A DNA stretch of 64,000 nucleotides from Leucoraja ocellata (lineage: Eukaryota), in the NCBI GenBank assembly GCA_036785375.1, contig JAWMAR010000104.1, positions 6,076,001-6,140,000 of the forward strand, written 5' to 3'. Position numbers and translations under genes: made by a program. The notes under the pieces were generated by a model, which saw only the letters and a program-made list of their open reading frames with translations, was not told the origin of the DNA and made no database searches. Below, one piece after another: positions 11,192-43,489 of the stretch (position 1 is the first letter of the stretch; each line of letters starts with the position of its first letter).

Positions 11192-11514
11192 CAGGTGTCA
11201 GCAACCTATGGCCCCCGGGCTGAATGCGGCCCGTAACCCGAAATCATCCGGCCCGCATCTTCTGTGAACATGTTTAAGAAAGAACTGCAGATGCTGGAAA
11301 AATGGAAGGTAGACAGAAATGTAGGAGAAACTCAGTGGGGGGAGACGTGCAAGGATTGCATGGGACTGCCTCACCTGCTGAGTTTCTCCAGCATTTTTGT
11401 CTACCTGTGAACATGATTTGATGTCTGCCATCCGGGATGAGATCCATGTGTACACGTGATAGATGTGGCCTGCCATCCACTAACAGACATGCAGAACAAG
11501 TTTGCCCACCCCTG
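11192..11514. mobile_element. Non-autonomous hAT element containing a small secondary insertion
   Basis: CAGG...CCTG termini and an 8-bp TSD CACTAAAT (11184-11191, 11515-11522). Confidence 0.75.
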
Positions 11515-11523
11515 CACTAAATC

Positions 11524-11556
11524 CTGATTGCTGCTGATGACTCACCTGTTGCTGGG
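11524..11556 (-). promoter_or_regulatory. Distal X1-X2 module with a CAAT-like box
   Basis: Minus strand CCCAGCAACAGG-TGAGTCA-7 nt-CAATCAG. Confidence 0.55.
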
Positions 11557-12038
11557 CAGAGGGACCAGGTTGAGATGTGTTTTGGTATACCGAGGAATGG
11601 TGAAGTAATGATCATGAGGTGGTTTCAGCAGCATTTCTGTAAACTTACTCAAAGCAATGTCCCAGAAAGGGCATGGTTCCGAGTGAGTGCCACTCTGGGA
11701 GGGGCAGTACTGAGGGAGTGGCGCACTTTTTTCCAAAAATAAAAAAGTCAATTATTTATAATAACATGTACAACACAAAAGAATACAAACAAACCCATAT
11801 AACACAAAGTATTAGATATTTCACTATCCTTATTAAGGACACTATATCCCCCGCGGTGCCCAGCAGTCCCGAAAACCCCCCATGGCGCACCTGGACATAT
11901 ATGGGGTCAGTTTTTACACAAAGGATCATGGTGGAGGTAGATAAGGTAGTTATGTTTAAGAGGTGCATGGAGATAAGAGCTGGAGGGTGGATGCAGCTCG
12001 GTAGGACTTTGGCTGGGCTGAATTTACATGCGGTTCTG

Positions 12039-12169
12039 GTGCAGGATAAGTTACACCCCGGCTGCTCCGTGCCGAGGGTGTCGTTCCCCCTGCACAAAGC
12101 AACACGTTTCCCTCTATCCTCGTCTGCCAGCAACCCCTGGCTGATGGGGACGCTTGGTCACGTACACGA
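12039..12169 (+). ncRNA. SNORA63: SNORA63 (E3) copy 3, downstream of the rps14 poly(A) signal (orphan; expression uncertain)
   Basis: Same 131-nt hairpin-H-hairpin-ACA sequence inside a duplicated ~500-bp block; no evident host intron. Confidence 0.75.
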
Positions 12170-14614
12170 ACTCCAGTGTTCCCGGCACGTTGCTCCCTCT
12201 CGCTGGGAGCTCTGCTCTCTGAGATGACTTGTTTTGTATCAACCTTTCATTTGGAGTGTAGCCATCTAGCACCATCCCATACAATCACTATTCTTTTAAA
12301 TCTCTCTTCTATTGTATTGTAACCTACCCCATCCCCTTTGCTCCACCTATTGTACTTGAGTTTGACTTTATTGGGTGATGCATAGTACAATCTGACTTGA
12401 TAACACGCAACAAAACGCCAGAAAAGGAGTAGGCAGCCGGCTCGGGCTGGCGCCGTGACTCATGCTTGGTCAGGCCCAGAAGCAACCCAACCAGGACACC
12501 TTCAGCTCTACCCTCCTATGCACAGGGCGTCCAAAGATGTGGATGGTGGGTGTGAAGGCAAGGAGCAGACCCTTTAGATGTTGGAACAGAGGATGCAACC
12601 TCACGCTGCACTACGGCAGGGGTGGTAGTGAGGGAGTGCTGCACTGCATCTCAATGCACAGGACTAGGCTCTTCAGCCAATAATATGCCAAACGTGATAT
12701 CAATCTGCTGGCATGTGATCCATTCCCTGCCTATCCGTGTACCTATTCAAAAGTATCTTAAATAGCACCCACCACCCTTTAAAAAAACTTGCCCGCACAT
12801 CTTTAAACTGTCCCTCTCACATTAATGCTAAATACTAATTTAAAATTTTCCATCCTATGAATAAGCTTCTAACTGTCTACCTTATCTATTCCTCTCTGGA
12901 TGCTCCGGTTTCCACTCACATCCCAAAGACATGTGGGTTTGTAGGTTAATTGACCCTCTGTAAATTGTCCCTAGTGAGTAGGGAGTGGATGAGAAAGTGG
13001 GATAACAGAACTAGTGTTAACGGATGATCGATGGTCGGCGTGGGCCGAAGGGCCTGTTTGCATGCAGTATTTTTAAATCAATAAAACCCACGCTGCCTGA
13101 ACTCGATGACAATGTCATGCCTGAGTTCTAATATGTGTTAGGAGATGCTTGTTTCCCAAGTTTCAACGGACTACACTTCATTAAAAACTTCATGAGTTGC
13201 AAAATCCAGAGTCAAGAGTATTTACTTGTCAACTGAACCAGAACGATGACAGTCTTACTTGCTGTAGCTTGATATATTAAACTCAACAACAAACTGCAAG
13301 AAGAAACAGAAACTGCGGATGCTGATTTACAAAAAAAGACGAAGTGTTTCAGTCTGTTGAAGGGTTCTGACCAAAAACGTAATTTGTCCGTGTTCTCCAG
13401 AGATGCTGGCTGCCCCGCTGAGTCACTCCAACAAACGGCATGTGCGTTGTGAGTTTAATTTACAGATACAGCATGGAAACAGGTCCTTCAGTCCACCAGG
13501 TCCAAGCCGACAAAGGTGCCCCACCTACACTGGTCCTGTCTGCAAAGGGCGCTCAGCATCGCCAAGGACTGCTCTCACCCCAACCATGGACTATTTAACC
13601 ACCTACCATCCGGGAGGCGCTACAGGTCTCTCCGTTGCCCGACCAGCAGGTCCAGGAACAGCTTCTTCCCTGCGGCTGTCACACTGCTCAACAATGTACC
13701 TCGGTGACTGCCAATCACCACCCCCCCCCCCCCCCCCCCCGGACACTCCTACCACAGGAAAAACACTGATTGTATGCATGTAAATAGATTTATTTATTGA
13801 AATCATATTCTATGTTGCTCTTCCAGGGAGATGCTAAATTAATTTCGTTGTCTCTGTACTGTACACTGACAATGACAAATAAAGTTGAATCTGAATCTGT
13901 TTGGTCTAAAACACTCCTGTCCAAGTGTCTGGGTCAGTAGTTATTTTCCCTTTGGGGGAGGATATTGGTATTAGTTTATGATTTTTTTGGGTAGTGGGAT
14001 ACAGCAAAAAACTTTTGCATGCTATCCAGGCTAATTATACCCTACACGAGTACAAATGAGAAACTAAACAGTGCAGAATAGAGTGTTGCACGTAAAGAGG
14101 AAGTACAGAGATTTTTAAAAAGTGCAAGGGCCACATTGAAGTGGTAGGTGGGAGTTCAGGAATAGTGTGGTTAAGGCAGAACAGCCAGTAGAGCTGCTGC
14201 CTCACGGTGCCAGAGAACCCAGGTTTGATCCTCACCTCGGGTGCTGTTGTGTGGAATTTGCACATTCAGCCTGTGACCATGTGCATTTCCTCTGGGTGCT
14301 CCAGTTTAGTTCATAAGTGATAGTAGAATGAGGCCATTCAGCCCATCAAGTCTACACCCGTACTAATCCCACATCCCCAAAACGTGAATGTTTACAGGTT
14401 AATTGGCCCTCTAAATTGCCCCAGTGTGTAGGGATTGGATGAGAAAGTCAGATAACATCGATCATAATAAGCGTGATCGATGGGCGGCGTGGACTCGGCG
14501 GGCTGAAGGGCCTGTTTCTGTTCTGTCTCTGACTATGAAGGGTGCAATATTAATGCCCTTTGTTCTTGTTGCGGCTCCATTTGCTGTCAATTAACCCGTC
14601 AACCAATTGATTGA

Positions 14615-14798
14615 AGGTACACAAAAAAGCTGGAGAAACTCAGCGGGTGCAGCAGCGTCTATGGAGCGAAGGAAATAGGCAGGGTTTCGGCCCGAAACGT
14701 TGCCTATTTCCTTCGCTCCATAGATGCTGCTGCACCCGCTGAGTTTCTCCAGCTTTTTTGTGTACCTTCGATTCTCCAGCATCTGCAGTTCCTTCTTA
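14615..14798. mobile_element. Palindromic Penelope-type short insertion
   Basis: ~65-bp inverted arms; flanked by a 14-bp direct repeat AACCAATTGATTGA (14601-14614, 14799-14812). Confidence 0.7.
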
Positions 14799-14816
14799 AA
14801 CCAATTGATTGATGTG

Positions 14817-14835
14817 TGACTCATCGGTTGCCAGG
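14817..14835 (-). promoter_or_regulatory. Distal X1-X2 module
   Basis: Minus strand CCTGGCAACCGA-TGAGTCA. Confidence 0.55.
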
Positions 14836-17642
14836 CAGACTTCCCAGTTGTATTGTGTTTTTAGTTTAGCATGGAAAACAGGCTCTTCGGCTGACCAGCG
14901 ATCATCCGTTCTTACTGGCTAAAATAATGTGTAGGAAAGAACTGCAAATGCTGCTTTACATCAAAGATAGACACAAAATGCTGGAGTAACTCAGCGGGTC
15001 AGACAGCATCTCTGGCGAAAAGGATGTTGACTTTCCGGATCGAGATCCTTCTTCAGGCAGATGTTAAGCTGGAACGAGTGCAGAGAGGATTTATAAGGAT
15101 GTTGTCGGGGCCCGAGGGAGAGGTTGAGCAGGCTATTCTTTTGAGCGCCAGAGGCTGAGAGGTGATCTTATATTGGTGTATGAAATCATGAGAGGAATAG
15201 ATAGGGTGAATACACACAGTCTTTTACCCAAAGTAGGGGATTCAGAACCAGAGGACGTAGGTTTAAGATGAGGGGGGAAAGATTTAGTAGGAACTTGAGG
15301 GGCAACTTTGTTACACAAATGGTGGTACGTATATGGAACGAGCTGCCAGAAGAGTTAGTAGACAATTGACAATAGGTGCAGGAGTAGGCCATTCGGTCCT
15401 TTGAGTCAGCACTGCCATTCAATGTGATCATGGCTAATCATCCACAATCAGTACCCCGTTCCTGCCTTCTCCCCATATCCCCTGAGGCAGGTACTATAAC
15501 AATGTTTATTAAACATTTGGACAGGTATATGGATAGGTTTGGAGATATGGACCAAATGCGGGCAGGTTCATACTGTTATCCTACTTTCTCATCCACTCTC
15601 TAGAACAGTAGGGACAATTTACTGAGGGTCAAGAGAATCTAAAACAGTGTAGATGGGGCATATTGGTCAGCATGGGCCGATGGACCTGTTTCAATGCTAT
15701 ATGACTATAGGTTTCTATGACTCTTAAGCGGTGGCAGGGTGGTGCAGTGGTAGAGCTTGTGCCTTACGGCATCAGAATCATGGGATAGATCCTGACTATG
15801 GTTACTGTCTGTGCGGAGTTTGTAATTTCGTCCTGTGACTGCGTTGGCTTTCTCCAGGAGCTCAGGTTTTCATCTACACTCCAAAGACATACAGGTTTGT
15901 CGGTTAATTGGCTTTTGTAAAATTGTAAATTGTCCCTAGTGTGTAGGATAGTGCTAGTGTACAGGGATTGCAGGTCGGTGTGGACTCGGAGGGCCAAAAG
16001 GCCTGTTTCTGTGCTGTATCGCTAAAGACTAAAAGACTCATGCTCTTAAGGTGAGAGGGTTAAGGTTTAAGGCAAAGTCGACACTTGACTCTTGCAAGCG
16101 GTGACTAGCTACCCGCAGAGAATGCAAACCGCTTCACAAACCTCTCTTAGACATCCTGGGGATGTGAAACTTGGTTTGAGTTTCCTGTTCCTCTTTCAGC
16201 AGTCAGACCTGCTGATTTGGCGCGGCGCTAAAATCCCATGATTGACCACCTTCCAGCTTTGTGTGTCCATGTGTCTTTGCTTTTTCAATCCATAGCTGCC
16301 AACTCAGATATAGTCTGGAAACAGGCCCTTTGGCTCACCGACTCCACGCCGACCATCGATCACCCGTTCACACAAGTTCTATGTTATTCTACTTTCTCAT
16401 CCGCTCCCTACACACCAGGGGCAATTTACAGAGGGCCAATACAATATAAAACAGTACAGCACAGGAACTGTCCTCTCGGCCCACAATGTCTGTGGTGAAC
16501 ATTATGCCAAGATATACTGATCTCCTCTGCCTGCACTCGATCCATATCCCTCCATTCTCTACGCGCCTATCTAAAAGCCTCTTAAACGCCATGGTCATAT
16601 CAAACACCACCACCCTCAGTGTGAAAAACTTGTCCTGCACATCTCCTTTAAACTTTGCCCCTTTCACCTTAAAGCTAGTGTTGGACATTTCCACCCTGGG
16701 GAAAAGGTTGACTGTCTACCCTATCTAGCCATTCCAGTGAAAAGGCTTTGCTATCCAAGATTGTACATGGGTACAATCATGCCACACGCAAGTACCGACA
16801 GGTAGTTTAGTTTACATTTACGGCGTGGAAACAGGTCTTTTGGTCCACCAAATGCACCGATCATTGATCACTCATTCACACTGGTTGATTGGATTAATTG
16901 ATCAATTGAAAGATACAGCACGGAAACTGGCCCTTCGGCCCACCAAGTCCACCTGTTCACACTAGGAAATTGGAGCACCCGAATGAAACCCACATGGTCA
17001 CAGGGAGAACATGCAAACTACACACACACACACAATGTCTTTATTTGGAGAATTCAAAGGCCTCACAGCACCAGAGACCCATGTTCGATCCTGCCTTTGG
17101 GTGCTGTCTGTGTGGAGTGTGCACGTTCTCCCTATGATCGCGTGGGTTTCCTATGGGTGCTCCGGCTTCCTCCCATATATCCCAAAGACGTGCGGAGGAA
17201 AAGGATGAGTTCACATTTAGAACGGAGATGAGGAAACACTTTTTCTCACAGAGAGTGGCGAGTCTGTGGAATTCTCTGCTTCAGAGGGCGGTGGAGGCAG
17301 GTTCTCTAGATGCTTTTAAGAGAGAGATATATAGGGATCTTAAAATAGCAGTCAGGGGATATGGGGAGAAGGCAGGAACGGGGTACTGATTGGGGATGAT
17401 CAGCCATGATCACATTGAATTGCGGTGCTGGCTCGAAGGGCCGAATGGCCTACTCCTGCACCTATTGTCTATTGTATGGGTTTATAGGTTAATTGGCCCT
17501 CTGTAAATTTCCCCGAAAGTGGGATAACAGAACTAGTGTGAATGGGTGGTTGATGGTTGGCGTGCACTCATGTTGCATCTCTAAGCTAAATTAAACTAAA
17601 CTGTGTCCATGCTGCATCCCTAAACTAATTTAAACTGTTTCC

Positions 17643-18280
17643 TTGCAGGCAGTGAAGAAAGGTCATGGCATGTTGGCCTTCAAAACAAGAGGATTTGAGT
17701 ATAGGAGCAAAGAGGTGCATCTGCAGTTGTACAGGGCCTTGGTGAGACCACACCTTGAGTATTGTGTGCAGTTTTGGTCTCCAAATTTGAGGAAGGACAT
17801 TCTTGCTATTGAGGGAGTGCAGCGTAGGTTCACAAGGTTAATTCCCGGGATGGCGGGACTGTCATATGTTGAAAGAATGGAGCGACTGGGCTTGTATACA
17901 CTGGAATTTAGAAGCAGGGATCTTATTGAAACATATAAGATTATTAAGTGATTGGACACGCTAGAGGCAGGAAAATTGTTCCCGATGTTGGGGGAGTCCA
18001 GAACCAGGGGCCACAATTTAAGAATATGGGGTAGGCCACTTAGAACGGAGATGAGGAAAAGCTTTTTCACCCATAGAGTTGTGAATCTGTGAAATTCTCT
18101 GCCGATTCTTTGGATTTTTTCAAGAGTGAGTTAGATAGAGCTCTGGGAGATAGCGGTCAGGGGATATGGTGAGAAGGCAGGAATGGGGTACTGATTGGGG
18201 ATGATCAGCCATGATCACAGTGAATGGCGGTGCTGGCTCTAAGGGCCGAATGGCCTACTCCTGCACCTATTGTCTATTGC
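17643..18280 (+). mobile_element. CR1-type LINE 3' fragment
   Basis: ORF2 C-terminus LYRALVRPHLEYCVQFWSP...; ends in the CTATTGT-type tail. Confidence 0.9.
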
Positions 18281-18496
18281 TGTATGTCTAAACTAATTTA
18301 AGCTAAACTAAACTGCCTCCATGCTGCATCTCTAAACTAAACTAGTCAAAGGCCAGGTAATTGTATGATAGAATAGGGCTGAAAGGTAGAATGGCCTTGT
18401 AAGTACTTCCTGTAAACGCAAGTAGTTTCTCGGTAGCTGTGGCAGGTCTGAAGGGGAACTGAGCCGTGGCCGGCAGAGCTGTGTCTGGGTTTGGTC

Positions 18497-19006
18497 CAGC
18501 GACACCAGAGGCATTCAGAGGGAGAGAGACAATTGGCTGACTGTTGACTCACCAGTTGCCGGGGAGAAGTCGGAGATGAAGGCGAGTTTTTGAGGTCGTA
18601 ATTAAAGAGCGAGCAGCTGCAATGTGTAAAGGCAGAGAATTAACTCTTGAGCTTGCAGCTGATCTCGTAGACACAGGGAACTGCAGAATCTTTGCAGAAC
18701 ATGGATAGGTGATGTTTCGGATCGGGACCCTTCTTCAGACTGATGGGGATGGGGGGAGAAAGCAGGGAGAGGTGGGGGCGGGACAAAGTCTGGCAAGTGA
18801 CAGGTGGATACAGGTAAGGGGGTTTGATTGGCAAATGGGTGGGCAGAGATAGGAAGAAGACATCTTCCTTGTGTCTGAAAAAGGGTCCCGACCCGAAACG
18901 TTGCCTGGCCATGTTCTCCACAGATGGTGCCTATCACCCGCCGAGTTCCTCCAGCACTTTGTGTCTTCATTTTGTAAACCAGCATTGGCAGTTCCTTGTG
19001 TCTCCA
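18497..19006 (+). repeat. Local segmental duplication with 29465-30003 (continuing as 24324-24580 vs 30029-30265)
   Basis: Shared unique sequence and shared repeat junctions. Confidence 0.9.
18532..18563 (-). promoter_or_regulatory. X1-X2-CCAAT module (upstream copy of a duplicated block)
   Basis: Minus strand CCCGGCAACTGG-TGAGTCA-8 nt-CCAAT. Confidence 0.6.
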
Positions 19007-19012
19007 ACATTG

Positions 19013-22000
19013 GAAACATAGAAAATAGGTGCAGGAGTAGGCCATTCGGCCCTTCGAGCCAGCACCGCCATTCAATATGATCATGGCTGATCATCCAAAA
19101 TCAGTACACCGTTCCTGCTCTTTCCCCATATCCCTTGATTCCCCCAGTCCCAAGAGCTAAATCTAACTCTCCCTTGAAAACATCCAGTGAATTGGCCTCC
19201 ACTGCCTTCTGTGACAGAGAATTCCACAGATTCACAACAAACTCTCTGGGTGAAAAGATTTCTCCTCTTCTCAGTCCTAAATGGCTACCACTTATTCTTG
19301 CTGTGGCCCCTGGTTCTGACTCCCCCAACATCGGGAACATTTTTGCTGCATCTACCCTGTCCAACCCTTTAAGAATTTTATAAGTTTCTTGTAAGATCCC
19401 CTCTCATCCATCTACATTCCAGCGAAAGCAAGCCCAATCGACCCATTCTTTCATCATACGTCTTTTCCGCCATCCTGGAAAATAACCTGATGAATCTATG
19501 CTGCACTCCCTCAATAGCAATATTTTCCTTCCTCAAATTAGGAGACCAAAATTGCACACAATTTGCTCACCAGGGCCCTGTACAACTGCAGTAGGACCTC
19601 CTTGCTCCTAAACTCAAATCGTCTCGCAATGAAGGCCATTGGCTTTCTTCACTGCCTGCTATACCTGCCTGCTTACTTTCAGTGACTGATGTACAAGCAC
19701 ACCCAGGTCTCGTTGCATCTCCCCTTCTCCTAATCTGACACCATTTAGATAATAATCTGCAGAACATGGATAGGTGATGTTTCGGATCCTTCTTGTCCTT
19801 GCCCCCAAAGTGGATAACCTCCCATCTACCCACATTATCCAGCATCTGCCATGCTTCTGCCCACTCACCCAACCTATAATCCAAGTCACCCTGCAACCCT
19901 GTTTAGTGCTTTAGTGTGTTTTGTGCGTTGGCTGCTGCCGCTGTTGCTGTGCAGTAATTTTTACACAGCATGTGTAGAGTCGCGTATAGGAGGGATGAAC
20001 TCCTTATGTGGCGACGGACAGCTTACGGAATAAAACACCATATTCCATCTGAGCTGAAGAAGCCGTTCCGTGGTTGCCGTGCAGGTGCCAGGCTAAGGGC
20101 CAGGCTAAGGGCCTGGAGGTGGAGATACAAGCCGTTTCTGCCATCGATCCTTATGGGGAACGTCAACTCATTCCCTAACAAGTGTGAGGAGTTGGAGGTC
20201 CTTATGAAGAATCAACGGGTCTACCGTGAGTGCAGTCTCATGTGTTTTACCGAGACGTGGCTGATGGACATCATCCCGGATTCCTGTGTGGATCTCCCCG
20301 GCTTCACTACGGTACGAGCAGATAGAGACCCGGGCAAGTGAGAAGATCAAAGGTGGGGGACTTGCTCTGCTTGTGAACAATAGATGGTGTAATCCAGGTC
20401 ACATAACTGTGAAAGATAATATCTGTTGTCGGGATATTGAGCTCCTGGCGGTTGGACTGAGACTTTATTATGTACCGAGGGAGTTCTCCCACATCGTCGC
20501 CATTATTGTTTCATTCCTCCTCGAGCGGAGCCTGTAGTCGCATGTAACGTCATCCAAGAGACTGTCGCGAGATTACAGACCCGACACCCGGACGTACTCA
20601 TTGCCTTATCAGGGGACTTCAATCATGTGAACATCAGCCCCCACTTGTCAGGCTTCTCACAGTATGTTGACTGTCCCACAAGGCACAATAAGACACTGGA
20701 CTTGTGCTATGTCAATGTCAAGGAGGCCTATAGTGTCTTAGCCTTTGCACCGCTTGGCAAATCAGATCACAACCTGGTTTATCTAAGGCCTTCTTACAAA
20801 CCCTGTGTACTGAGACAGCCTACAATCACCTGGTCTTTCAGAAAATGGACACCAGAGGCCAGTGAATCACTGAGGGACTGCTTTCAATGCACAGACTGGG
20901 ACATACTGATGGAGTCACAGGAATTAAACAGCTGTATGGACATCGACAGGATGGCTGGATGCATAACGGACTACATCAACTTCTGTATGGATGTTGTTGT
21001 GCCAGTAAGAACTGTTTGTTGCTTTCCCAATAACAAACCTTGGATTACAAGCAACATTCAGAGCCTAAACGAGAAAAAGGAGGCTTTCAAGGTTGGTGAT
21101 CGGGAAAAAATCAAGAGGGTACAGCACCACTTGAAAAGGAGTATGAAGCAGGCAAAAGGGGACTATAAAAGGAAGCTGGAGAGGAAACTGCAGTACAACA
21201 ACATCAAAGAGGTGTGGAGAGGAATGAAGACCATCACTGGCTTCAAGGAGAAGAGAAGCCAGCCGTCAGGAGACGTGGACAAGGCCAATGAGTTTAACCT
21301 GTTCTATAACAGGTTTGATCTGGTATCCCCTCCCACCTCTACAGGTGCAGCCTCTCCCCCACCATCACCTCCACGAGGCAGCCCCCCCAACACCACAGCT
21401 GCAGCACCTCCTATGCCGGCATCTCCTCAACTGTTCTTCACGGGGGACGAGGTGAGAGCTGAGCTGAGGAGGCTGCGTGTGCCCTGGTAAAGCAGCTGGC
21501 CCTGATGGTGTATGTCCCAGGCTACTGAAAGACTGTGCGGTTCAGCTGGCGGAGCCGCTCCAGACCATTTTCAACCTGAGCCTCCAGTCAGGGAGGGTAC
21601 GAGGTTTGTGGAAAACATCATGTCTCGTGCTGGTTCCCAGAGCAGTGCGGCCGACCGAGATCAACGACTACAGACCGGTGGCCCTTACATCCCATATCAT
21701 GAAGACAATGGAGCGGCTACTCATTCGTCTCCTGAGACCACAAGTCCAGCACGCACTAGACCCACTACAGTTTGCGTACCAGGAGAACATTGGGGTGGAT
21801 GACGCAGTCCTCTACATGCTGCACCGGATCTACTCCTTTTTGGACAAACCCGGTGGCTATGTGAGGATTATGTTCTTCAACTTCTCAATTGCGTTCAACA
21901 CCATCCAACCCCTGATTTTGAATGACAAGCTTAAGAAGATGGGGGTGGATTCCACATTTATCTCCCGGATATACGACTACCTGACGGGTCGACCACAGTT

Positions 22001-24312
22001 TGTCAAGCTGGGGGACAGTGTCTCTGGCACAGTGGTGTGCAATGTTGGAGCCCCACAGGGAACGGTTCTGGCCCCGTTCCTCTTCACCCTGTATACAGCA
22101 GACTTTAACTATAAGTCTGACACATGCCACATACAGAAATATTCAGATGATACAGCGATCGTGGCATGTGTAAGGAACGGGCAGGAGGAGGAATACAGGG
22201 ACTTGGCCAGTTCCTTTTGTGCCTGGAGTGAAGAGAACTGTCTCATCCTGAACACAACTAAGACTAAAGAGATGGTGGTTAACTTTGGCAGGTCCAAGCT
22301 CCCCCTTCAGCCGGTCAACGCTGCTGGGGCTGACATTGAGGTGGTGCAGACATATAAATACCTTGGAGTGCACCTTGATAACAAACTGGACTGGTCTGTC
22401 AACTCTGACTCCCTCTACAAAAAAGGCCAGAGCAGACTCTTTTTCCTCAGAAGGCTCAAATCCTTCAATGTGTGTAGTGATATGCTGCACATGTTTTACA
22501 ACACTGTTGTCGCAAGTGTTATTTTCTACACTGTTGTCTGCTGGGGCAACAGCATTAGTGCAAAAAACAACAAGAAGCTGGTCAAACTGGTTAAACGAGC
22601 TAGCTCAGTGCTGGAGGGGAGAGTAGACTCTGGGATGGATGTGCTTGAGAGGCGTATGAGGCACAAGGTGCAGGTCATCCTGAAAAACCCCGGGCATCCC
22701 CTCCATGTAATTCTGGAGAGTCAAAAGGGCACTCGGAACAACAACCGGCTCCTCTCCCTGCCCTGTAGAACAGAGCGGTTCAGGAGATCCTTCACCCCTG
22801 CACCCATTAGATTTTATAATTTGGACCGCTAGGCTGTAGGGGGATGCATTCTTGCAATTTTTAATTTTTAATTGTTAATTATTGGTCTTTTTAAGTATTT
22901 ATTGCTCTCAGGTAGTGTCCACAGTGCATTCTATGTATTTTCTGTGCGTTCGTTTTGAATCTGTGGGTTTGTTGGTTGGGGGCTTCTGGACATCTGAATT
23001 TCCCTGAGGGGATCAATAAAGTATTAAAAAAAAAAATAAAAATAAAAACCTCCTAGCATCCTCCTCGCAGCTCACACTGCCACCCGGCTTTGTGTCATCC
23101 GCAAATTTTGAGATGTTACATTTAATTCCATCGTCTAAATCGTTAATATACAATGTAAACAACTGGAGTCCCAGCACCGAGCCTTGCGGCACCCCCCTAG
23201 TCACTGCCTGCCATTCGGAAAAGGACCCATTAATTCCTACTCTTTGCTTCCTGTCTGCCAACCAGTTCTTTATCCATGTCAATACCCTACCCCCAATACC
23301 ATGTGCTCTAATTTTGCACACTGAGCTCTTGTGTGGGACCTTGCCAAAGGGTTTTTGAAAGTCCAGATACACCACATCCACTGGCTCTCCCTTATCCATT
23401 CTATTGGTTACATCCTCAAAAAATAGCAAAAGATTATTCAAGCAGGATATCCCCTTCATAAATCCATGCTGACTTTGACCGATCCCATCATTACTTCACA
23501 AATGCGCTGTTATAACATCTTTAATAATCGACTCCAGCATCTTCCCCACTACCGACGTAAGGCTAACTGGTCCATAATTCCCAGTTTTCTCTCTCCCTCC
23601 TTTCTTAAAAATGATCACCAATGCATCCACGATTTCTTGGGCCACCTCCTTGAGTACTCTGGGATGCAGACCATCTGGCTCTGGGGATTTATCTGCCTTG
23701 TCCCAACAGATTACCTAACACCATTTTGACTAATGTGGATTCCCTTCAGTTCCTCCCTCTCACTAGACCTTCAGTCCCCTAGTATTTCCAGGAGATTGTT
23801 TGTATCTTCCTTAATGAATACAGAACCAAAGTACTCGTTTAACTGTTCTGCCATTTCCATGTTTCCCATTATAAATTCACCCGTCTCTGTCTGTAAGGGA
23901 CCTACATTCGTCTTCACTAATCTTTTCCTTTTTTACATACATCTAGTGACTTTTAGTCAGTTTTTATATTCCCTGCAAGCTTTCTTTCATGCTCCCCCCC
24001 TCTTAATTAACCCCTTTGTCCTCCTCTGTTGAGTTCTAAATTTCTCCCAGTCCTCTGGTTTGCCGCTTCTTCTGTATTATACATTTATATGCCTTTTCCG
24101 TGGCTTTAACACTATCCTTGACTTCCCTCGTCAGCCACGGTTGAGCCCAGTTTTGTTTTTTTGCCAGACAAGGATGTCCAATTTCTAGAGTTCGTCCATG
24201 CGGTCTTTAAATCTTCGCCATTGCATCTCCACCGTCAACCCTTTAAGTATAATTTGCCAGTCTATCCTAGCCAATTCCCATCACGTACCTTCAAAGTCTC
24301 ATTTATTCAAGT
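19013..24312 (-). mobile_element. Decayed CR1 LINE, split at ~19900/23047 by a Rex1 insertion
   Basis: RT motifs (VYLDFQK, GVPQGSVLG, KFADDTK) in 23013-23459; the sequence GTCACCCTGCAACC|TCCTAGCATCC is continuous across the insertion. Confidence 0.88.
19901..23046 (+). mobile_element. Rex1/Babar-clade non-LTR retrotransposon, near full length, frameshifted
   Basis: AP endonuclease (CFTETWL, GDFN, SDH) and RT 21477-22832 (DYRPVALTS, GAPQGTVLAPFLFTLYT, YSDD); AATAAA and an A-rich tail. Confidence 0.9.
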
Positions 24313-25104
24313 TTACACAAAGTGAGATAAAGGAGAGAAGAAATACAAAATGTGAAGCCAGAGGAGGGAATATAGGTGGAAGGGGACCAGGAGGAGGGGA
24401 AGGGTTGTTGAAAGTTAGTTGCCTAAAATTCAAGAGAGAGTTAGATTTAGCTCTTAGGGCTAAAGGAACCAAGGGATATGGGGGAAAAGCAGAAACGAGG
24501 CACTGATTTTAGATGATCAGCCATGATCATATTGAATGGCGGTGCTGGCTCGAAGGGCTGAATGGCCTACTCCTGCACCTGTTTTTTTATGTTTCTAATT
24601 GGACATTTCACTGTTCATATCAAAAGACACAAAATGCTGGAGAACCTCAACGGGTCAGGCAGCATCTCTGGAGAAAAAGGATGGTGACATTCCAGGTCGG
24701 GACCCTTCTTCAGACTGAGAGTAGGGGGTGGGTGGGGGTGGGGGGGGGGGGGGGGGGGATTGAAGAGCTGGAGGTGAGGAAAGAGCAGGACTAATCAGGA
24801 CCGACCTCAGGCAGGATGGTGCCCTGGTTGGCCCAGTGTTGGCTAGGGAAGGTGTGATCAAAGATCATAGATCTTTGGGTGCAATCTCAAGAGGGAAACA
24901 ATATGGAGAAGTGTGGAACCGGTAATACGACCAAGATGGAGGAAGGGGGGGGGGGGTTGGAGATTGTAAAAATTTAGTTAAAATTAGAGAATTCAAAATT
25001 CATACCGCTGGGTTGTAAGCTACCCAAGTGGAATGTGAGGTGCGGTTCCTCTAATTTGCGTGTGGTGGTTGGATTGTTGAGTTAGTGCGGCCATGCAGAA
25101 GATT

Positions 25105-25196
25105 CTGATTGGCGAGCAGTGGTTGAGTCATCAGTTGCCAGGTGAAGTCCGCTCTTTAAGAATGAGTTTTGTGTCGATGACTCACAAGTTGCAATA
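25105..25196 (-). promoter_or_regulatory. MHC-II-type X1-X2-CCAAT enhancer module plus a second X1-X2-like site
   Basis: Minus strand CCTGGCAACTGA-TGACTCA-11 nt-CCAATCAG (25105-25142); a second site TTGCAACTTG-TGAGTCA at 25178-25196. Confidence 0.7.
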
Positions 25197-25239
25197 GCTG
25201 TTTGTCTGCTTTAGTCTTTCCTTTGAGTTTGGATGTAGG

Positions 25240-25665
25240 CAGTGCTGGATTTACGTATAAGCTAAACAAGCTATAGCTTAGGGCCCCCACTTTCTAGGGG
25301 GCCCCCCGAAAAAATTGATGGGCCTCGAGGTCTAGGGGGGCCTCCGGCCAAGGCAGAACACCTACCGTTCAACTCTGGGCGGCCCCCCTCTCTATCTCTC
25401 TCTCACCATCTCCCCCAGCTATCCGTGTCCGGGCCGCCGGGCTCCGCTCGCTCCTCATCCGCCGGCACGGCAGGCCGCCTTGCACATGCGCACAACCACA
25501 GCCAGCACATCATCGGCCGCCCTGCGCAGGCGCACTGCAACGGCAACTGGTCGGGCTGGGCACTTTCTCCCTCGCTTTGAATTGTGGGAGATTTGGCCGC
25601 CATGGCTGTTGGGGGCCTCACAAGTGGAACAGTTTAGGGCCTCTCTTCATCTAAATCCGCCACTG
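25240..25665. mobile_element. Non-autonomous hAT MITE between the X-Y module and the cd74 promoter
   Basis: TIRs CAGTGCTGGATTTA / TAAATCCGCCACTG; 8-bp TSD GATGTAGG on both sides. Confidence 0.85.
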
Positions 25666-26542
25666 GATGTAGGGTTAGGATTATTCTATGCACAGGTACT
25701 ATTGCTTTGTTTTGCACCCTTGGGGAAAAGGTTCTGACTGTCTACCCTGTCTTTGTCTCTCTAGATTTTATATATGGCTATCTCGTCTTCCCTCAGCCTT
25801 CGAATTTCCAGACAGAGAAAACTATCCAAGACTGTCCAACCTCTCCTGAAGCTAATATGCCCCAATCCAGGCAGCATCCTGGTGAAATTGTTGTAAATAT
25901 ACCAGCCCCCCTAAATCCCTATAATCAGTCTGAACCCAATTAACCTACAAACCTGCACGTTTGTGGAATTTTGGGAGGAAACCGGGGCACCCAGAGAAAC
26001 CCACGCGGTCACAGGGTGAACGTGCAAACTCCACACACTCAGCACCCGCGGTCAGGACCAAACCCGGGTCTCTGGCACTGTGAGGCAGTGGCTCTACCCT
26101 CTGCGCCACTATTCCTCCAGCAGTTTGTGTTGTTTATTTTTGTATCTGCAGTTCCTAGTTTCTCTAGATGTGTACAAGACCTGTGTCTGTACTGTAGTTT
26201 AGTTTAGTTTGGCTTAGTTTAGTTGAGTTTATTGCCATGTTTACTGAGGTACAGCAAAAAGCTTTTTTTTGTTGAGTGCTATCCAGTCGGCGGAAAAACT
26301 ATACATGATTACACTCGAGCCGTCAACAATGTACAGATACAGGATACAGGGAATAATGTTTAGTTCTCGACCTGAAATATCACCTATTCCTTTTCCCCTG
26401 AGACGCTGCCTGACCGACCCTTGATGGCCCAAGGGTCTCCAATGGGGTAGAAGGGAGGTCAGGACCGCCCTCCAGTTGGTGAGAGGGTGGTTCAGTTGCC
26501 TGATAACACAATTAGACAAACACATTGCTGGTGCTTATATTC

Positions 26543-26609
26543 GAGGGCGGGTTTATATATGGTGAAGTACGGCAGGGACTTTCCAAGCTGCAGGAGAGCC
26601 AACTTCCTC
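26543..26609 (+). promoter_or_regulatory. cd74 proximal promoter: GC box (GGGCGG 26545-26550), perfect NF-kB site GGGACTTTCC (26575-26584), ETS/PU.1-type site AACTTCCTC (26601-26609)
   Basis: Motifs lie in the only ~200 bp of unique sequence upstream of the cd74 ATG; kB and Sp1 sites are known features of mammalian invariant-chain promoters. Confidence 0.7.
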
Positions 26610-26721
26610 GTTTTGGCTTTGTTGAGATTAAAACGTAGTGCCTGCCTTGCCCTGCACGCAGTCTGCACACACATCTCTCTAAGAGCTCTCCCTTCAGTCG
26701 ACAGTGAAGTCCACCGTAACC

Positions 26722-26834
26722 ATGTCAGCGAACGAGCAGCAGAACTCTTTGCTGCGAGACTCTCAACAGGATATAGCCAGCAACTCGGATGTGGAGGTGA
26801 GAGGGGCTACCCCTGCTGCAGTGCCAGTCCACAG
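26722..26834 (+). CDS. cd74: CD74 / MHC class II invariant chain, exon 1 (cytoplasmic tail)
   Basis: accATG; MSANEQQNSLLRDSQQDIASNSDVEVRGATPAAVPVHR with an acidic dileucine-like sorting motif (EQQNSLL); donor AG|gtaagg; phase 2 matches exon 2; preceded by kB/GC/ETS sites. Confidence 0.85.
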
Positions 26835-26935
26835 GTAAGGTGTTAACCAAAGTCACTTTCCCATTCCCGATTCCCGATTCCCAAAGAGCAGGTCAATGAT
26901 TCCCGGGTTCTGGGGCCTCACGGATGGACCGCAAC

Positions 26936-27393
26936 TAGGGTTGCCAACTTTCTCACTCCCAAATATAGGACAAAAGGTCAAAATAAGGAACAAATTCCCG
27001 ACGGCAATTCGTTGACCGACTTGGCCATGGCTGGGTGAATGATGAGTTGATTGCACACACAGCCCAGCCGGAGGGTCAGCTGAGGAGGTTTGGCCTGGGC
27101 GCGCGACGTCGCGCACAAAGTCCGGCACCCCATACACTCATGAATTGACGATCGGCCATGAGAAGGAGGGGTGGTGGTGTTGGCGGTAAGCGAAGGTCCG
27201 AAGGTCGGACAGCTGGCCGGGCTGCCGACCGACCGGGCCATGGGTGGGGCTGGACGCGGCGCTCTGACCCGACAGTCCCCTCGACCCGAGTAGTAACAGT
27301 CAAATACGGGACAAGGGCGGTCCCGTACGGGACAAACCAATTTAGCCCAATATATGGGATGTCCCAGTTAATACGGGACAGTTGGAAAACTTA
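26936..27393. mobile_element. Non-autonomous hAT MITE at the start of cd74 intron 1
   Basis: TIRs TAGGGTTGCCAACT / AGTTGGAAAACTTA; 8-bp TSD ACCGCAAC. Confidence 0.85.
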
Positions 27394-29497
27394 ACCGCAA
27401 CTGTCCAGCACACTTTAGTTTATTGTCACGGGTTCTGAGGTACAGTGAAAAGCTGGAATCCCAGACCATCACACAAACCAACCTCCCTTCCATTGACAGT
27501 ATACAGATACACTTCACGCTGCCTCGGCAAGACCACCAGAATAATCAAGGGCCAGTCTTTGGTAGATACAAGGGAGGGGAGGGGGCGGGATTGATAGGCA
27601 GATGGTTGGAACAAAGGCCAGAGACAAAAGCAAGTGTGACATAAAAGGATTGAAGTTGCAAATTGTGAAGCTAGAGGAAGGAATGTAGGTGAAAGAAGAG
27701 GGGGGGGGGGGGGAGAAATAGGTGTGAGTCTAGGATGGGGAGAAAAGGGAAGGGGAGGAAGGGGGCTTGTTGGAGATGATCTAAAATTGGAGAATTCAAT
27801 GTTCATACCATTGGGCGTAAGCGACCCAAGCTTAAATATAGAAACAAGTTTATTGAGTGCTGGAGGAACAGTATCTCTGTATCTCCGGAGGGAATGTACA
27901 GGCGATGTTTTGAGTCGGGACCCTACTTCACACTTCTGCTTTCAGTTCATTGATGCATGAGATGTTTTGGGTCTAATTCAGGGAGTTAAAATAGTAAACT
28001 TTCAGGGGAAAACATAAAATAGGAAGTGTGATTTGCAGTCTGACAAAGCAATCTAAATATCAGATGTAGCCGAGGAGATTAGTTTAGCTTGGCATCATGG
28101 TCGGCACAGATATGGTGGGCCAAAGGGCCTGTTCCGATGCTGTACTGTGCTGTATTAGTCACTGATCTTTCTGATTTTGATTAATTGTTTGAAGGAAATC
28201 TGTGGGCAGTCACGTTGGCACAGCGGTAGAGTTGCTGCCTTACAGCAAAATGCAGTGCCAGAAACCCGGGTTCGATCACGACTACGGGTGCCGTCTGTAT
28301 GGAGTTTGTACGTTCTCCCCGTGATCGGCGTGGGTTTTCTCCAAGGTCTTCGGTTTCCTCCCGCGCTCCAAAAACGTAGGTTAATTGGCTTGATAAAAAT
28401 GTAAAATTGTCCAAGTTGGCGATATGCAGAGTACTGCCCCGCTGACTACAAAATTCAGAAGGTTCAGAAGGTTGTGGCTGTGTCATCCTTTATGTTTTAA
28501 AATTCTGGAAGTTTGAAGTTTAGTTGCTACGTGTACCAAGGTACAGTGAAAAGCTTTTGTTGCATGCAAACCAGTCAGTAGAAAGACTATACCTGATTAC
28601 AATCAAGCCGTCTACAGTCTACAGATGAAGGGCATAACGATTATTGCAAGATAAAGTCTAGTAAAGTCTGATTAAAGATAGTCCGACGGGCATAGATAGA
28701 GTGGATGTGGAAAGGATGTTTCCACTGGTGGGAGAGTCTCGGACCAAAGGTGATAGCCTGGTCGCTCTTTTAGAAAGGAGGTGAGGAGGAACTTCTTCAT
28801 TGGCCAGACGGTAGTTAATCTGTGGAATTGCCACATAGGGCCGTGGAGGCCAAGTCAGTAGATTTATTTAAGGCAGAGATAGACAAATTCCTGATTAGAA
28901 TGGATGTCAAGGGCTATGGGTGAAGGCAGGAAAATAGGGTTAGGAGGCAGAGATCAGCCATGATTTAGTGAGCTGGGAGGTCAGGACTGCTCTCTGGTTG
29001 GTGTTAGTTGTGGACACAGCCCAGACCATCACACAAATAATCCTCCCTTCCATTGAATCCAAGACCACCAGCATAATCAAGGACCAGTCTCACCCTGGTC
29101 ACTCAATCTTCTCCCCTCTCCCATCAGACGAGAGGTACAGAAGTGTGAAAACGCACACCTCCAGATTCAGGGACAATTCCTTCCCAGCTGTTATCGGGCA
29201 ACTGAATCATCCTATCAACACCCAGAGAGTGGTCCTGACTTCCCATCTACCTCATTGGAGACCCTCGGACTATCTTTAATTGGAATTTAGCTTGCTCTAA
29301 ACATTATTCCCTTTATCCTGTATCTGTACACTGTGGACAGCTTGATTGACATCATATATAGTCTTTCTACCGACTGGTTAGCATGCAAGAACCTTTCACT
29401 CACTGTATGTTGGTACAAGTGACAAAGACCGAACTATCTCCAATAGGTCCACATCGCCTGCCGAGCGACACTAAAGGCATTCAGAGGGAGAGAGACA

Positions 29498-29529
29498 ATT
29501 GGCTGACTGTTGACTCACCAGTTGCCAGG
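29498..29529 (-). promoter_or_regulatory. X1-X2-CCAAT module in cd74 intron 1
   Basis: Minus strand CCTGGCAACTGG-TGAGTCA-8 nt-CCAAT; duplicate of 18532-18563. Confidence 0.6.
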
Positions 29530-33958: not shown

Positions 33959-34036
33959 GGGAATTACCCCGTTACTAATAATAATTAATTGACACAGACC
34001 TTCGGAAATTCCCTTGCAAATTACAGGGAAACTTCC
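33959..34036. promoter_or_regulatory. Cluster of NF-kB-like sites in cd74 intron 1
   Basis: GGGAATTACC (33959), GGAAATTCCC (34004) and GGGAAACTTCC (34026) within 80 bp of unique sequence; another GGGAATTTCC at 31262-31271. Confidence 0.5.
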
Positions 34037-34443
34037 TGGACAAATTCACTGCGTCGCACATCACTGATAACACCAATCATACCCAAATCCCTCCAAAAAC
34101 TTGTTGTGGACGTTATCTGGCTCTAAATATTATTCCCTTTAACTTGTATCTGTACACTGCAGACGGCTTGCTTGTAATCATGTACAGTTTTTCCACTGAC
34201 TGGATAGCATGCAACAAAAGCTTTTCACTGTACCTCGATACACGTGACAATAAACTGAACTGAACGGCAATGGGACTAGTGTAAATGAGTGATAGTGACT
34301 GGGTGGGCTGAAGGGCCTGTTTGTATGTTGTGTCTCTCTGTGGATCAGGGGCCACACACACACACACACACACCTCTCAGATGTTGTACACGGCCAGTGA
34401 AGCATTGAGGTGCTCCCCCTCACCATTGCCGTCTGCCTTCCAG

Positions 34444-34622
34444 GAGCCTGAGCTGGGGCCGAGGGCTGCTCTACGCTGGCGTATCCATCCTGGTGGCCAT
34501 GCTCATCGCCGGCCAGGTGGTCGGCATCATGTTCCTGATGAAGCAACAGGACAAGATAGACGGGCTGCAGAAGACCACGAGACGTCTTGAGAGCAAGTAC
34601 TCGGCGAGCCGCGGACCATTCA
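34444..34622 (+). CDS. cd74: CD74 exon 2 (type II transmembrane segment)
   Basis: SLSWGRGLLYAGVSILVAMLIAGQVVGIMFLMKQQDKIDGLQKTTRRLESKYSASRGPF, matching the invariant-chain TM pattern (RG.LY.G.SILV..L.AGQ....FL..QQ..ID.L); AG/GT boundaries. Confidence 0.95.
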
Positions 34623-41961: not shown

Positions 41962-42319
41962 AGTACTCGAGGTCAGGATTGAACCTGGGTCTCTGGTGCT
42001 GTGAGGTAACGGCTCTACCCACATTGTCTTTGAGGGATTAGATTTCAGAGTTGATGACAATAAGGACATATTCCCTTTATCATTGTGGACGGCTTGATAG
42101 TAATCATGTATAGTCTTTCCGCTGAACGGATGGCATGCAACAAAAAGCTTTTCACTGTACCTAAACTAAACTAAAGTAAGGTCACATCATTATTGGAGTG
42201 GGAGGCAGTGTCAAGCAGAGCAAGCGTGCAAATCGCAGTGTGTATCTTCGGATGTTATTGTGTCACAATAATGTTTTGTTAGTTGCCTTGAAGTGACCAA
42301 ATGATTCTTGTCTCCACAG

Positions 42320-43453: not shown

Positions 43454-43489
43454 GTAGGCTTGAGTTTCTTCAGCTACCTGTTGTACTGA

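What the first reader, a model, noticed from the sequence alone, without database searches (positions are those of the whole stretch)
11524..29529. Six co-oriented MHC-II X1-X2(-CCAAT) modules form a distributed enhancer array around cd74
Seen: the composite motif CC(C/T)(A/G)GCAAC-N3-TGA(G/C)TCA occurs on the minus strand at 11538-11556, 14817-14835, 18545-18563, 25124-25142 and 29511-29529, with a weaker copy at 25178-25196. X1-X2 spacing is identical in all copies, and four have a CCAAT/CAAT box 7-11 nt beyond X2. They sit in small unique islands between repeats. Known: the RFX (X1), CREB/AP-1 (X2) and NF-Y (Y) module recruits CIITA to class II and invariant-chain genes, and mammalian Ii has upstream and intron-1 modules. 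Inference: this is a CIITA enhanceosome array or super-enhancer in a cartilaginous fish, all inverted relative to the gene, with the CCAAT box in the opposite orientation to classical class II Y boxes and a perfect AP-1 heptamer as X2. No X box is visible in the proximal promoter, so class-II-type control would be entirely distal.
Basis: partly seen in the sequence, partly recalled or inferred. Interest (0 to 1): 0.82.

Follow-up and report, generated by a model that had tools for sequence, protein, structure and literature searches.

The report
Skate cd74 X1-X2 regulatory module array
Six copies of the DNA signature that switches on MHC class II genes in mammals lie around the first exon of a skate's invariant-chain gene (cd74), which suggests this control system is as old as jawed vertebrates, though built with a looser geometry.

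Summary
GCAAC-N3-TGASTCA occurs six times in the 64-kb window, all on the minus strand and all between 11.5 and 29.5 kb. Of 14 TGASTCA heptamers in the window, six carry a GTTGC half-site at exactly +3; no other gap or orientation occurs.

Exon mapping puts the cd74 ATG at 26722. The modules therefore lie at -15.2, -11.9, -8.2, -1.6 and -1.5 kb, and at +2.8 kb in intron 1.

Only one pair (18545 and 29511) is a duplication. The other modules share nothing but a ~60-bp architecture: a newly noticed heptamer AAAAC[AT]C 19-21 nt 5' of X1, then X1, X2 and usually a CCAAT-type box 6-11 nt beyond. The cores lie in window-unique sequence between transposon copies.

My reading is that these are skate counterparts of the mammalian S-X-X2-Y modules, which in mammals also occur several times at Ii/CD74. 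The Y box is closer to X2, variably spaced and mostly flipped, so strict membership fails on that feature.

CIITA/RFX dependence, super-enhancer status and cross-species conservation remain untested: the tool for fetching orthologous loci was closed. Earlier scan notes suggest a second, similarly laid-out cd74 locus about 176 kb downstream.

The parts
11527..11583 (-). Module A, -15.2 kb from the cd74 ATG. On the + strand: Y-like ATTGC 11527-11531 (GCAAT on the minus strand, gap 6), X2 TGACTCA 11538-11544, X1 GTTGCTGGG 11548-11556, S-position heptamer 11577-11583.
   Evidence: lies in a window-unique island 11411-11892
14801..14861 (-). Module B, -11.9 kb. X2 14817-14823, X1 14827-14835, S-position heptamer 14855-14861. 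The Y region 14801-14812 holds CAAT-type pentamers. The only perfect CCAAT (14801-14805, + strand) is formed at the junction with a transposon copy that ends at 14801.
   Evidence: unique island 14802-14918
18532..18590 (-). Module C, -8.2 kb. Y ATTGG 18532-18536 (CCAAT on the minus strand, gap 8), X2 18545-18551, X1 18555-18563, S-position heptamer 18584-18590.
   Evidence: part of the duplicated segment 18498-19016
25108..25170 (-). Module D, -1.6 kb. Y ATTGG 25108-25112 (CCAATCAG on the minus strand, gap 11), X2 TGAGTCA 25124-25130, X1 25134-25142, S-position heptamer 25164-25170.
   Evidence: unique island 25065-25710
25178..25196 (-). Partial module D'. It has a perfect X2 (25178-25184), the same 3-nt gap and the GTTGC core, but a degenerate 5' part of X1. 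No Y or S-position element. Its X2 lies 7 nt from the S-position heptamer of module D.
29498..29556 (-). Module E, +2.8 kb in cd74 intron 1. Y ATTGG 29498-29502, X2 29511-29517, X1 29521-29529, S-position heptamer 29550-29556. A paralogous copy of module C.
29464..30013 (.). Duplicated segment (partner 18498-19016, 89-96% identity). About 175-185 nt of otherwise unique DNA carrying the module, followed by transposon-derived sequence.
   Evidence: Many contigs of run X20 start matching at 29638 or 29676, which marks the transposon boundary (table 7).
26509..26721 (+). cd74 proximal promoter region. TATA-like TTTATATA 26552-26559, NF-kB consensus GGGACTTTCC 26575-26584, ETS-like ACTTCCTC 26602-26609. 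It contains no X1-X2 composite. The transcription start site was not determined.
   Evidence: read directly; searches show no composite here. 26269-26508 immediately upstream is repeat-derived (I11 and I17).
26722..26835 (+). cd74 exon 1, coding part (ATG at 26722; the donor lies at 26834/26835).
   Evidence: tblastn: 100% to the Amblyraja radiata protein P0151 and to P0152, 89% to P0077. An RNA-type contig covers 26712-26835 with 0 differences, and a loose end after 26835 reads into exon 2.
34442..34621 (+). cd74 exon 2 (transmembrane and CLIP-region exon). It defines intron 1 as roughly 26836-34441.
   Evidence: Pfam MHC2-interact, E = 4.2e-15

Best explanation
[quoted passage not shown] Each full module reads on the minus strand as follows: an S-position heptamer AAAAC[AT]C; 19-21 nt; an RFX-type X1 half-site CCYRGCAAC; 3 nt; an X2 box that is a perfect TRE heptamer TGASTCA; and usually a CCAAT-type (NF-Y) box 6-11 nt further on. 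By inference, an RFX5-type complex on X1, a bZIP factor (CREB/ATF or AP-1 class) on X2 and NF-Y on Y bind cooperatively and recruit CIITA. The modules would then act as orientation-independent, partly redundant enhancers on a core promoter that carries its own TATA-like, NF-kB and ETS-like sites. What is shown: the motif architecture, its statistical excess, its independence from repeats within the window, and its position around cd74 exon 1. What is inferred: which factors bind, CIITA dependence, enhancer activity, and cd74 as the target gene.
For: The composite is exact at 5 sites against 0 expected, and at 6 sites for the core. Of 14 TGASTCA heptamers, 6 have GTTGC at +3, and no other arrangement occurs. 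Outside the core, the flanks of the four independent modules do not align, yet all four share AAAAC[AT]C at a fixed position. That occurred in 0 of 5000 shuffles and 1 of 5000 random sets of window 60-mers. CCAAT or ATTGG lies within 17 nt of X2 in 4 of 5 modules, against a 3.5% background. A perfect core with unalignable flanks is what purifying selection leaves, not neutral decay of a duplicate. The module cores match nothing else in the window except the single 18545/29511 pair, although 55% of 7-34.4 kb matches elsewhere in the window. All sites lie within -15.2 to +2.8 kb of the cd74 ATG, and none lies in the other 46 kb. In a related organism's contig set (run X20), the 200-nt bin holding module E is one of only 2 bins out of 30 with low summed depth; the other holds exon 1. 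This is a crude sign that the module is not a high-copy repeat there. Precedent: mouse and human Ii/CD74 have an upstream MHC-II-like enhancer and two intron-1 S-Y enhancers bound by CIITA, one of them listed in Y-S orientation. An S-Y module also works in both orientations in reporter assays (passages of PMC2883540 and PMC1802633). The skate core promoter mirrors the mouse one in having TATA and NF-kB elements.
Against: There are no binding, chromatin or reporter data. Mammalian S-Y modules are described as strictly conserved in order, orientation and spacing (PMC2278383, PMC1802633, PMC4381081). Here the Y box is closer, its gap varies (6-11 nt), and it is mostly in the opposite orientation; in module B it sits at a transposon junction. 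The S-position heptamer cannot be equated with the mammalian S box. A perfect TRE could recruit AP-1/BATF rather than CREB. Cross-species conservation could not be read: the contig of organism G that spans modules D and D' shows 40 differences and 14 gaps over 423 nt, but their positions were not listed. Within the young C/E duplicate, the module is not clearly better conserved than its flanks. Genome-wide background frequency was not measurable with these tools.
Confidence: 0.65

Rival explanations
1. The modules are real regulatory elements, but not CIITA enhanceosome sites or not for cd74. They could be generic RFX (RFX1-3/7) plus AP-1/BATF composite enhancers, or elements acting on another neighbour.
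For: X2 is a perfect AP-1 TRE in all six sites. The Y geometry departs from the mammalian rule. All modules point away from cd74 upstream of the gene. Human CIITA ChIP-seq work reports thousands of RFX5/CREB/NF-Y co-occurrences that are not functional CIITA targets (PMC4381081 passages).
Against: By my recollection, the X1-N3-X2 gap is the arrangement of class II X boxes; this was not verified in a paper here. The cluster brackets exon 1 of the one class II pathway gene in the window. The only other gene identified, rps14, is a housekeeping gene. The fixed S-position element mimics the three-part S-X-Y layout.
Confidence: 0.2
2. The cluster is a by-product of local duplication or of a low-copy mobile element that happens to carry the motif, and has no function.
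For: Modules C and E are copies of one ~520-bp duplicated segment. All six share one orientation, as serial duplication would give. The region is dense in transposons, with 55% matching elsewhere in the window. Module B abuts a transposon end.
Against: Apart from the C/E pair, the flanks do not align at all, while 16-19 nt of core plus a heptamer 20 nt away are intact. Neutral decay old enough to erase the flanks would have erased the motifs. No module core matches any other place in the window. The transposon boundary next to module E lies outside the module (loose ends at 29638 and 29676). The summed depth of the module E bin is low in run X20.
Confidence: 0.08
3. Each module is the proximal promoter of an unannotated minus-strand transcript (a non-coding RNA or a decayed class II-like gene), since classical S-Y modules sit just upstream of start sites and point towards them.
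For: All modules read S to Y on the minus strand. Classical modules are promoter-proximal (PMC1802633 passage).
Against: No MHC-like or other host open reading frame lies downstream of any module in the six-frame list. Neighbouring reading frames are transposon-derived, for example a Tc1-like HTH at 10283-10693. There is no Rfam family in 9-31 kb. The RNA-type contig sets X1 and X17 have zero depth over the module E bin.
Confidence: 0.05

Closest known systems
Mammalian MHC class II S-X-X2-Y (S-Y, SXY, WXY) enhanceosome module, with HLA-DRA as prototype
   Same: Both have an RFX-type X1 half-site directly followed by a CRE/TRE-like X2 at a fixed gap. Both have a third conserved element about two helical turns 5' of X1, a CCAAT-type box on the X2 side, and an overall size of about 60 bp (65-70 bp in PMC2278383). 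Both are associated with a class II pathway gene.
   Different: The Y box lies 6-11 nt from X2 rather than at the fixed, longer mammalian distance (Y is 20-22 bp from the X box in PMC4374748; XY motif length is 46-50 bp for CIITA-regulated genes in PMC4381081). It mostly reads as a forward CCAAT on the S-to-Y strand, whereas the class II Y box is an inverted CCAAT (PMC2191494 abstract, seen in a search listing). X2 is a perfect TRE. The S-position sequence could not be matched to the mammalian S box. None of the modules is promoter-proximal.
Regulatory layout of mammalian Ii/CD74: core promoter plus upstream S-Y enhancer plus two intron-1 S-Y enhancers (Ii, Ii S'-Y', Ii Y''-S'')
   Same: Several S-Y-type modules serve one gene, both upstream and in intron 1, and at least one is inverted. 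The core promoter has TATA and NF-kB elements (PMC2883540 and PMC1802633 passages; window sequence). The gene order rps14 then cd74 on one strand matches my recollection of the human locus.
   Different: The skate has five or six modules spread over 18 kb, against three within a few kb in mammals. The nearest is 1.5-1.6 kb from the ATG. All are in one orientation, and the intronic one is a young duplicate of an upstream one, so it is probably not orthologous to the mammalian intronic enhancers.
Distal S-Y enhancers and the DR/DQ super-enhancer of the human MHC-II locus
   Same: Both involve dispersed extra X-Y modules at kilobase distances that bind RFX and CIITA and add to promoter modules (cited in PMC1802633 and PMC4243378; PMC7041702 and PMC13653327 seen as abstracts only).
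   Different: Those were defined by ChIP, looping and CRISPR data. Nothing comparable exists here, so 'super-enhancer' is only a label.
NLRC5-type SXY modules of MHC class I genes
   Same: The same X1/X2/Y platform, with an S box that decides which co-activator is used (PMC4374748 passages).
   Different: The target here is a class II pathway gene. Because the S-position heptamer is unclassified, the sequence alone cannot say which co-activator (CIITA or NLRC5) would be recruited.

Membership tests
MHC-II S-Y (SXY) enhanceosome module | X1 box: RFX half-site (GCAAC core), usually with a pyrimidine-rich 5' flank | tested here: met
   CCYRGCAAC at 5 sites and TATTGCAAC at a sixth. The 8 nt 5' of X1 are 7/8 and 6/8 pyrimidine in modules A and C/E, but only 3/8 and 4/8 in B and D (counted output).
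MHC-II S-Y (SXY) enhanceosome module | X2 box: a CRE/TRE-like heptamer at a fixed position next to X1 | tested here: met
   TGASTCA lies exactly 3 nt from GCAAC in 6 of 6 sites, and no other gap or orientation occurs in the window. That this gap equals the HLA-DRA gap is recalled, not checked in a paper (one search found no sequence text).
MHC-II S-Y (SXY) enhanceosome module | Y box: an inverted CCAAT at a strictly conserved distance and orientation from X | tested here: not met
   Gaps from X2 to the pentamer are 6, 4/8/11, 8, 11 and 8 nt. The CCAAT is forward on the S-to-Y strand in C/E and D; A has GCAAT; B has only a junction-made reverse CCAAT. The mammalian rule is taken from passages of PMC2278383, PMC1802633, PMC4381081 and PMC4374748.
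MHC-II S-Y (SXY) enhanceosome module | S (W) box at a fixed distance 5' of X1 | tested here: inconclusive
   A shared heptamer AAAAC[AT]C lies 19-21 nt 5' of X1 in all 5 full modules (0 of 5000 shuffles). Its likeness to the mammalian S consensus could not be checked: the logos are in figures and supplements, which were not available.
MHC-II S-Y (SXY) enhanceosome module | Occupancy by RFX5/RFXAP/RFXANK, CREB, NF-Y and CIITA; activity lost without RFX or CIITA | not testable with these tools
   No ChIP, ATAC or reporter data for this species are reachable here.
MHC-II S-Y (SXY) enhanceosome module | Location at a gene of the class II presentation pathway | tested here: met
   The modules lie at -15.2 to +2.8 kb around cd74 exon 1.
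MHC-II S-Y (SXY) enhanceosome module | Evolutionary conservation of the X-X2 core at orthologous positions | tested here: inconclusive
   Contigs of a related organism (run X20) cover modules D/D' and E, but the listing of differences was truncated.
Interspersed repeat or transposon family | Extended alignable similarity among copies and to other copies in the region | tested here: not met
   Only the C/E pair aligns beyond the ~60-bp module. The module cores have no other match in the 64-kb window. Genome-wide copy number was not testable.

The most novel reading that the evidence does not exclude
In skates, the class II enhanceosome platform has a compact geometry with a flexible Y: S-position heptamer, ~20 nt, X1, 3 nt, TRE-type X2, then a nearby NF-Y box that is mostly flipped. 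cd74 would be driven not by a promoter-proximal module but by a dispersed array of four to six redundant copies, one of which was recently copied into intron 1. If the same layout is found at this skate's class II alpha and beta genes, the rigid mammalian S-X-Y spacing would be a derived state, and multi-module control of the invariant chain would date back to the origin of jawed vertebrates.
Probability: 0.25. Interest if true: 0.7.

Novelty: new variant of a known kind. Interest (0 to 1): 0.5.

Why it matters
CIITA, the RFX complex and S-X-Y modules are the textbook example of a dedicated transcriptional enhanceosome, but nearly all the evidence comes from mammals. My three full-text searches found no paper describing such modules in cartilaginous fish. 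A clean, statistically strong set of X1-X2 composites at the cd74 gene of a skate would show that co-regulation of the invariant chain with class II is ancient. It also provides a natural experiment on how much Y-box spacing and orientation the platform tolerates. The sequences are short and defined, so they can go straight into the established reporter assays in CIITA- and RFX5-deficient B-cell lines. The result is not very surprising, because mammals already have three such modules at Ii. It also remains a sequence-only inference.

Tried and rejected
Repeat-family origin. I aligned the flanks, searched for repeats and ran a self-BLAST of each module +/-300 nt and of 7-34.4 kb. Only modules C and E are related to each other, so this origin is rejected for the other modules, within the limits of one window.

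A module in the proximal promoter. There is none. The only GTTGCC near the promoter (about 26494) lies in a repeat copy and has no X2.

Hidden minus-strand genes or RNAs at the modules. The six-frame ORF list, Pfam and Rfam gave only transposon-type hits or nothing.

The single read-laying run showed contigs of another organism over modules D/D' and E, but not the letters at the motifs. This question is left open.

Genome-wide background frequency. No collection here holds this genome, so I could only compare against the rest of the window and against shuffles.

Reference sequence or consensus for the mammalian X-Y spacing. One search found no sequence text.

Original papers. Krawczyk 2004 and Zhu & Jones 1990 are not held. 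Their content is cited only through PMC2883540 and PMC1802633.

Spliced model. Exons were placed one by one with database proteins.

Full report
**1. The observation**

- It occurs exactly at 11538, 14817, 18545, 25124 and 29511: 5 matches, with a mean of 0.00 in 100 dinucleotide-preserving shuffles.
- Allowing two mismatches adds nothing (5 matches, 0.41 expected).
- The shorter core TGASTCA-N3-GTTGC adds the site at 25178 (6 matches, 0.03 expected). The reverse-strand form with one mismatch gives the same six.
Six heptamers have GTTGC exactly 3 nt to their right on the + strand. No heptamer/pentamer pair occurs at any other gap from 0 to 15 or in any other orientation.

All six sites lie between 11.5 and 29.5 kb and all are on the same strand.

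**2. What surrounds the sites**

The window comes from a rajid skate.
- Its cd74 exons are 100% (exon 1) and 97-98% (exon 2) identical to a protein named as Amblyraja radiata invariant chain (P0151) and to a transcript-derived protein (P0152). They are 85-89% identical to the Rhinoraja longicauda protein P0077.
- Exon-by-exon tblastn places cd74 on the + strand: exon 1 at 26722-26835 (ATG at 26722), exon 2 at 34442-34621, and further exons up to the thyroglobulin-type exon at about 43201-43455.
- Pfam confirms MHC2-interact and Thyroglobulin_1.
- RNA-type contigs confirm the exon 1-exon 2 splice. One contig covers 26712-26835 without a difference. Another runs on after 26835 into the first letters of exon 2.
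- A ribosomal S11-family exon (rps14) lies upstream on the same strand.

The modules therefore sit at -15.2, -11.9, -8.2, -1.6 and -1.5 kb from the ATG, and at +2.8 kb in intron 1. I made no joined spliced model.

**3. Repeat or not**

- Modules C (18545) and E (29511) belong to one duplicated segment, 18498-19016 and 29464-30013, at 89-96% identity. It consists of about 180 nt of otherwise unique DNA followed by transposon sequence.
- The other modules do not align with one another outside the motifs.
- None of the module cores matches anything else in the 64-kb window, although 55% of 7-34.4 kb does.
- Module B abuts the end of a transposon copy at 14801. The only perfect CCAAT of that module is created at this junction.
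- I laid contig sets of four runs on 24000-29999 at 80% likeness. In run X20, 28 of 30 bins have a summed depth of at least 3,566. The two exceptions are 26600-26799 (6.85; exon 1 and core promoter) and 29400-29599 (32; module E).
- The tool warns that this depth is not a copy number. I use it only as a crude sign that module E is not part of a high-copy repeat in that organism.
- Thousands of X20 contigs begin to match at 29638 or 29676, which places the transposon boundary outside the module (table 7).

There are thus four independent full modules, one young copy, and one partial module.

**4. Anatomy**

Read on the minus strand, every full module has the following parts.
- **Core:** CCYRGCAAC, 3 nt, TGASTCA.
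- **S-position heptamer:** the heptamer AAAAC[AT]C lies 19-21 nt 5' of X1 in all five. A 7-mer shared with at most one mismatch and within +/-2 nt by the four independent modules occurred in 0 of 5000 shuffles of these flanks, and in 1 of 5000 sets of random window 60-mers.
- **Y side:** CCAAT or ATTGG lies within 17 nt in 4 of 5 modules, against a 3.5% background.
  - Gap 8 with CCAAT on the S-to-Y strand in modules C and E.
  - Gap 11 with CCAATCAG in module D.
  - Gap 6 with GCAATCAG in module A.
  - Imperfect forward pentamers at gaps 4 and 8, plus the junction-made reverse CCAAT at gap 11, in module B.
- **Partial module D':** it has X2, the gap and the GCAAC core only. It sits 7 nt from the S-position heptamer of module D.

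A perfect 16-19-nt core plus a fixed heptamer 20 nt away, set in flanks that no longer align, is the pattern expected from selection on the motifs rather than from neutral decay of copies.

**5. The core promoter**

- Region 26509-26721 has a TATA-like octamer (26552-26559), a consensus NF-kB site (26575-26584) and an ETS-like site (26602-26609), but no X1-X2 composite.
- The 240 nt just upstream are repeat-derived. Most of 25200-26500 has high summed depth in X20.
- The -1.6 kb module may therefore once have been much closer to the promoter. This is an inference.
- The start site was not determined. The contig end at 26712 is not evidence for it.

**6. Comparison with what is known**

Passages I read say the following.
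- The S, X, X2 and Y boxes of class II genes are strictly conserved in order, orientation and spacing, and form a 65-70-bp module (PMC2278383; PMC1802633).
- CIITA-regulated human genes have XY motifs of 46-50 bp (PMC4381081).
- S and Y lie about 16 and 20-22 bp from the X box in NLRC5 modules, where the S box decides co-activator choice (PMC4374748).
- The Y box is an inverted CCAAT (PMC2191494; abstract seen in a search listing).
- Mouse Cd74 has a TATA/Sp1/CCAAT/NF-kB promoter, an upstream enhancer with class II promoter elements, and two intron-1 enhancers that bind CIITA (PMC2883540).
- Human Ii has the modules Ii, Ii S'-Y' and Ii Y''-S'', and the RAB4B module works in both orientations (PMC1802633).

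The skate array therefore matches a known regulatory logic for this very gene. It differs in four ways:
- the number and spread of modules;
- the lack of a proximal module;
- a perfect TRE as X2;
- a Y box that is nearer, variably spaced and mostly flipped.

Because the Y feature is defining for the mammalian family and is not met, I describe the sites as working like S-Y modules and file them as a variant, not as strict members. That the 3-nt X1-X2 gap equals that of HLA-DRA is my recollection. I could not verify it in text, and supplements that may hold the matrices are closed.

**7. What remains open**

- Factor binding, CIITA dependence, enhancer strength and the 'super-enhancer' label are untested.
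- Cross-species conservation is open. An X20 contig of 517 nt spans 24807-25229 (modules D and D') with 40 differences and 14 gaps. A ~150-nt contig spans about 29499-29648 with three listed differences. Two of these equal the state of copy C. The table of differences was truncated, so the motif letters cannot be read.
- Three full-text searches found no paper on S-X-Y modules in cartilaginous fish. This covers only the held library.

**8. Earlier notes of the scan (titles only, unchecked)**

The notes report a second array of five co-oriented modules 123.6 kb beyond the window's end. They also report a second extra cd74 exon 154 kb beyond, and a cd74 reading frame with two single-base deletions 138.7 kb beyond. 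The spacing from array to exon is 30.4 kb there and 30.8 kb here, so a second copy of the whole locus seems to lie about 176 kb downstream. It could be a true duplicate or an uncollapsed haplotype. It is not independent support, but it is an obvious comparison to make.

**Verdict**

I judge it a new variant of a known kind of regulatory module, of moderate interest.

Noticed in passing
window 26552-26609: The cd74 core promoter carries a TATA-like octamer, a perfect NF-kB consensus GGGACTTTCC (26575-26584) and an ETS-like ACTTCCTC. This mirrors the TATA plus NF-kB make-up reported for mouse Cd74 (PMC2883540).
   Followed up: partly
about 176 kb downstream of this locus (outside the window; earlier notes s1-884886, s1-884721, s1-885569): A second cd74 locus with a similar five-module array, the same extra exon, and two frame-breaking single-base deletions. 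It is either a real duplicate or an uncollapsed haplotype in the assembly.
   Followed up: no
window 42313-42429: The extra 'CLIP-like' linker exon is present (92% identity) in a transcript-derived protein, P0152 (257 aa). That protein ends without the thyroglobulin domain, so the exon is used in at least one mRNA form.
   Followed up: partly
window 14610-14772: An 81-nt inverted repeat with 95% complementary arms separated by 1 nt (a hairpin-like pair of transposon ends), directly left of module B. The right arm's element ends at 14801, 15 nt from X2.
   Followed up: partly
window 18498-19016 and 29464-30013: A ~520-bp intrachromosomal duplication moved an upstream module together with adjacent transposon sequence into cd74 intron 1. 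In the laid contigs of organism G, two of three listed differences match the upstream copy's state.
   Followed up: partly
window 26779-26787: An X1-like CCAGCAAC lies inside the coding part of cd74 exon 1 on the + strand, but no TRE follows it. Probably coincidental.
   Followed up: no
window 10283-10693 (-), 20627-22832 (+), 51347-58118 (-): Transposon coding remnants: a Tc1/Sleeping-Beauty-like HTH ORF, and long reverse-transcriptase/endonuclease-type ORFs of LINE-like elements. The LINE label is judged from the translations only. One of these elements sits between modules C and D.
   Followed up: partly
window 25280-25620: A GC-rich stretch between module D and the promoter. It is unique within the window but has high summed contig depth in run X20, so it is probably a repeat family not otherwise represented in the window.
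   Followed up: no
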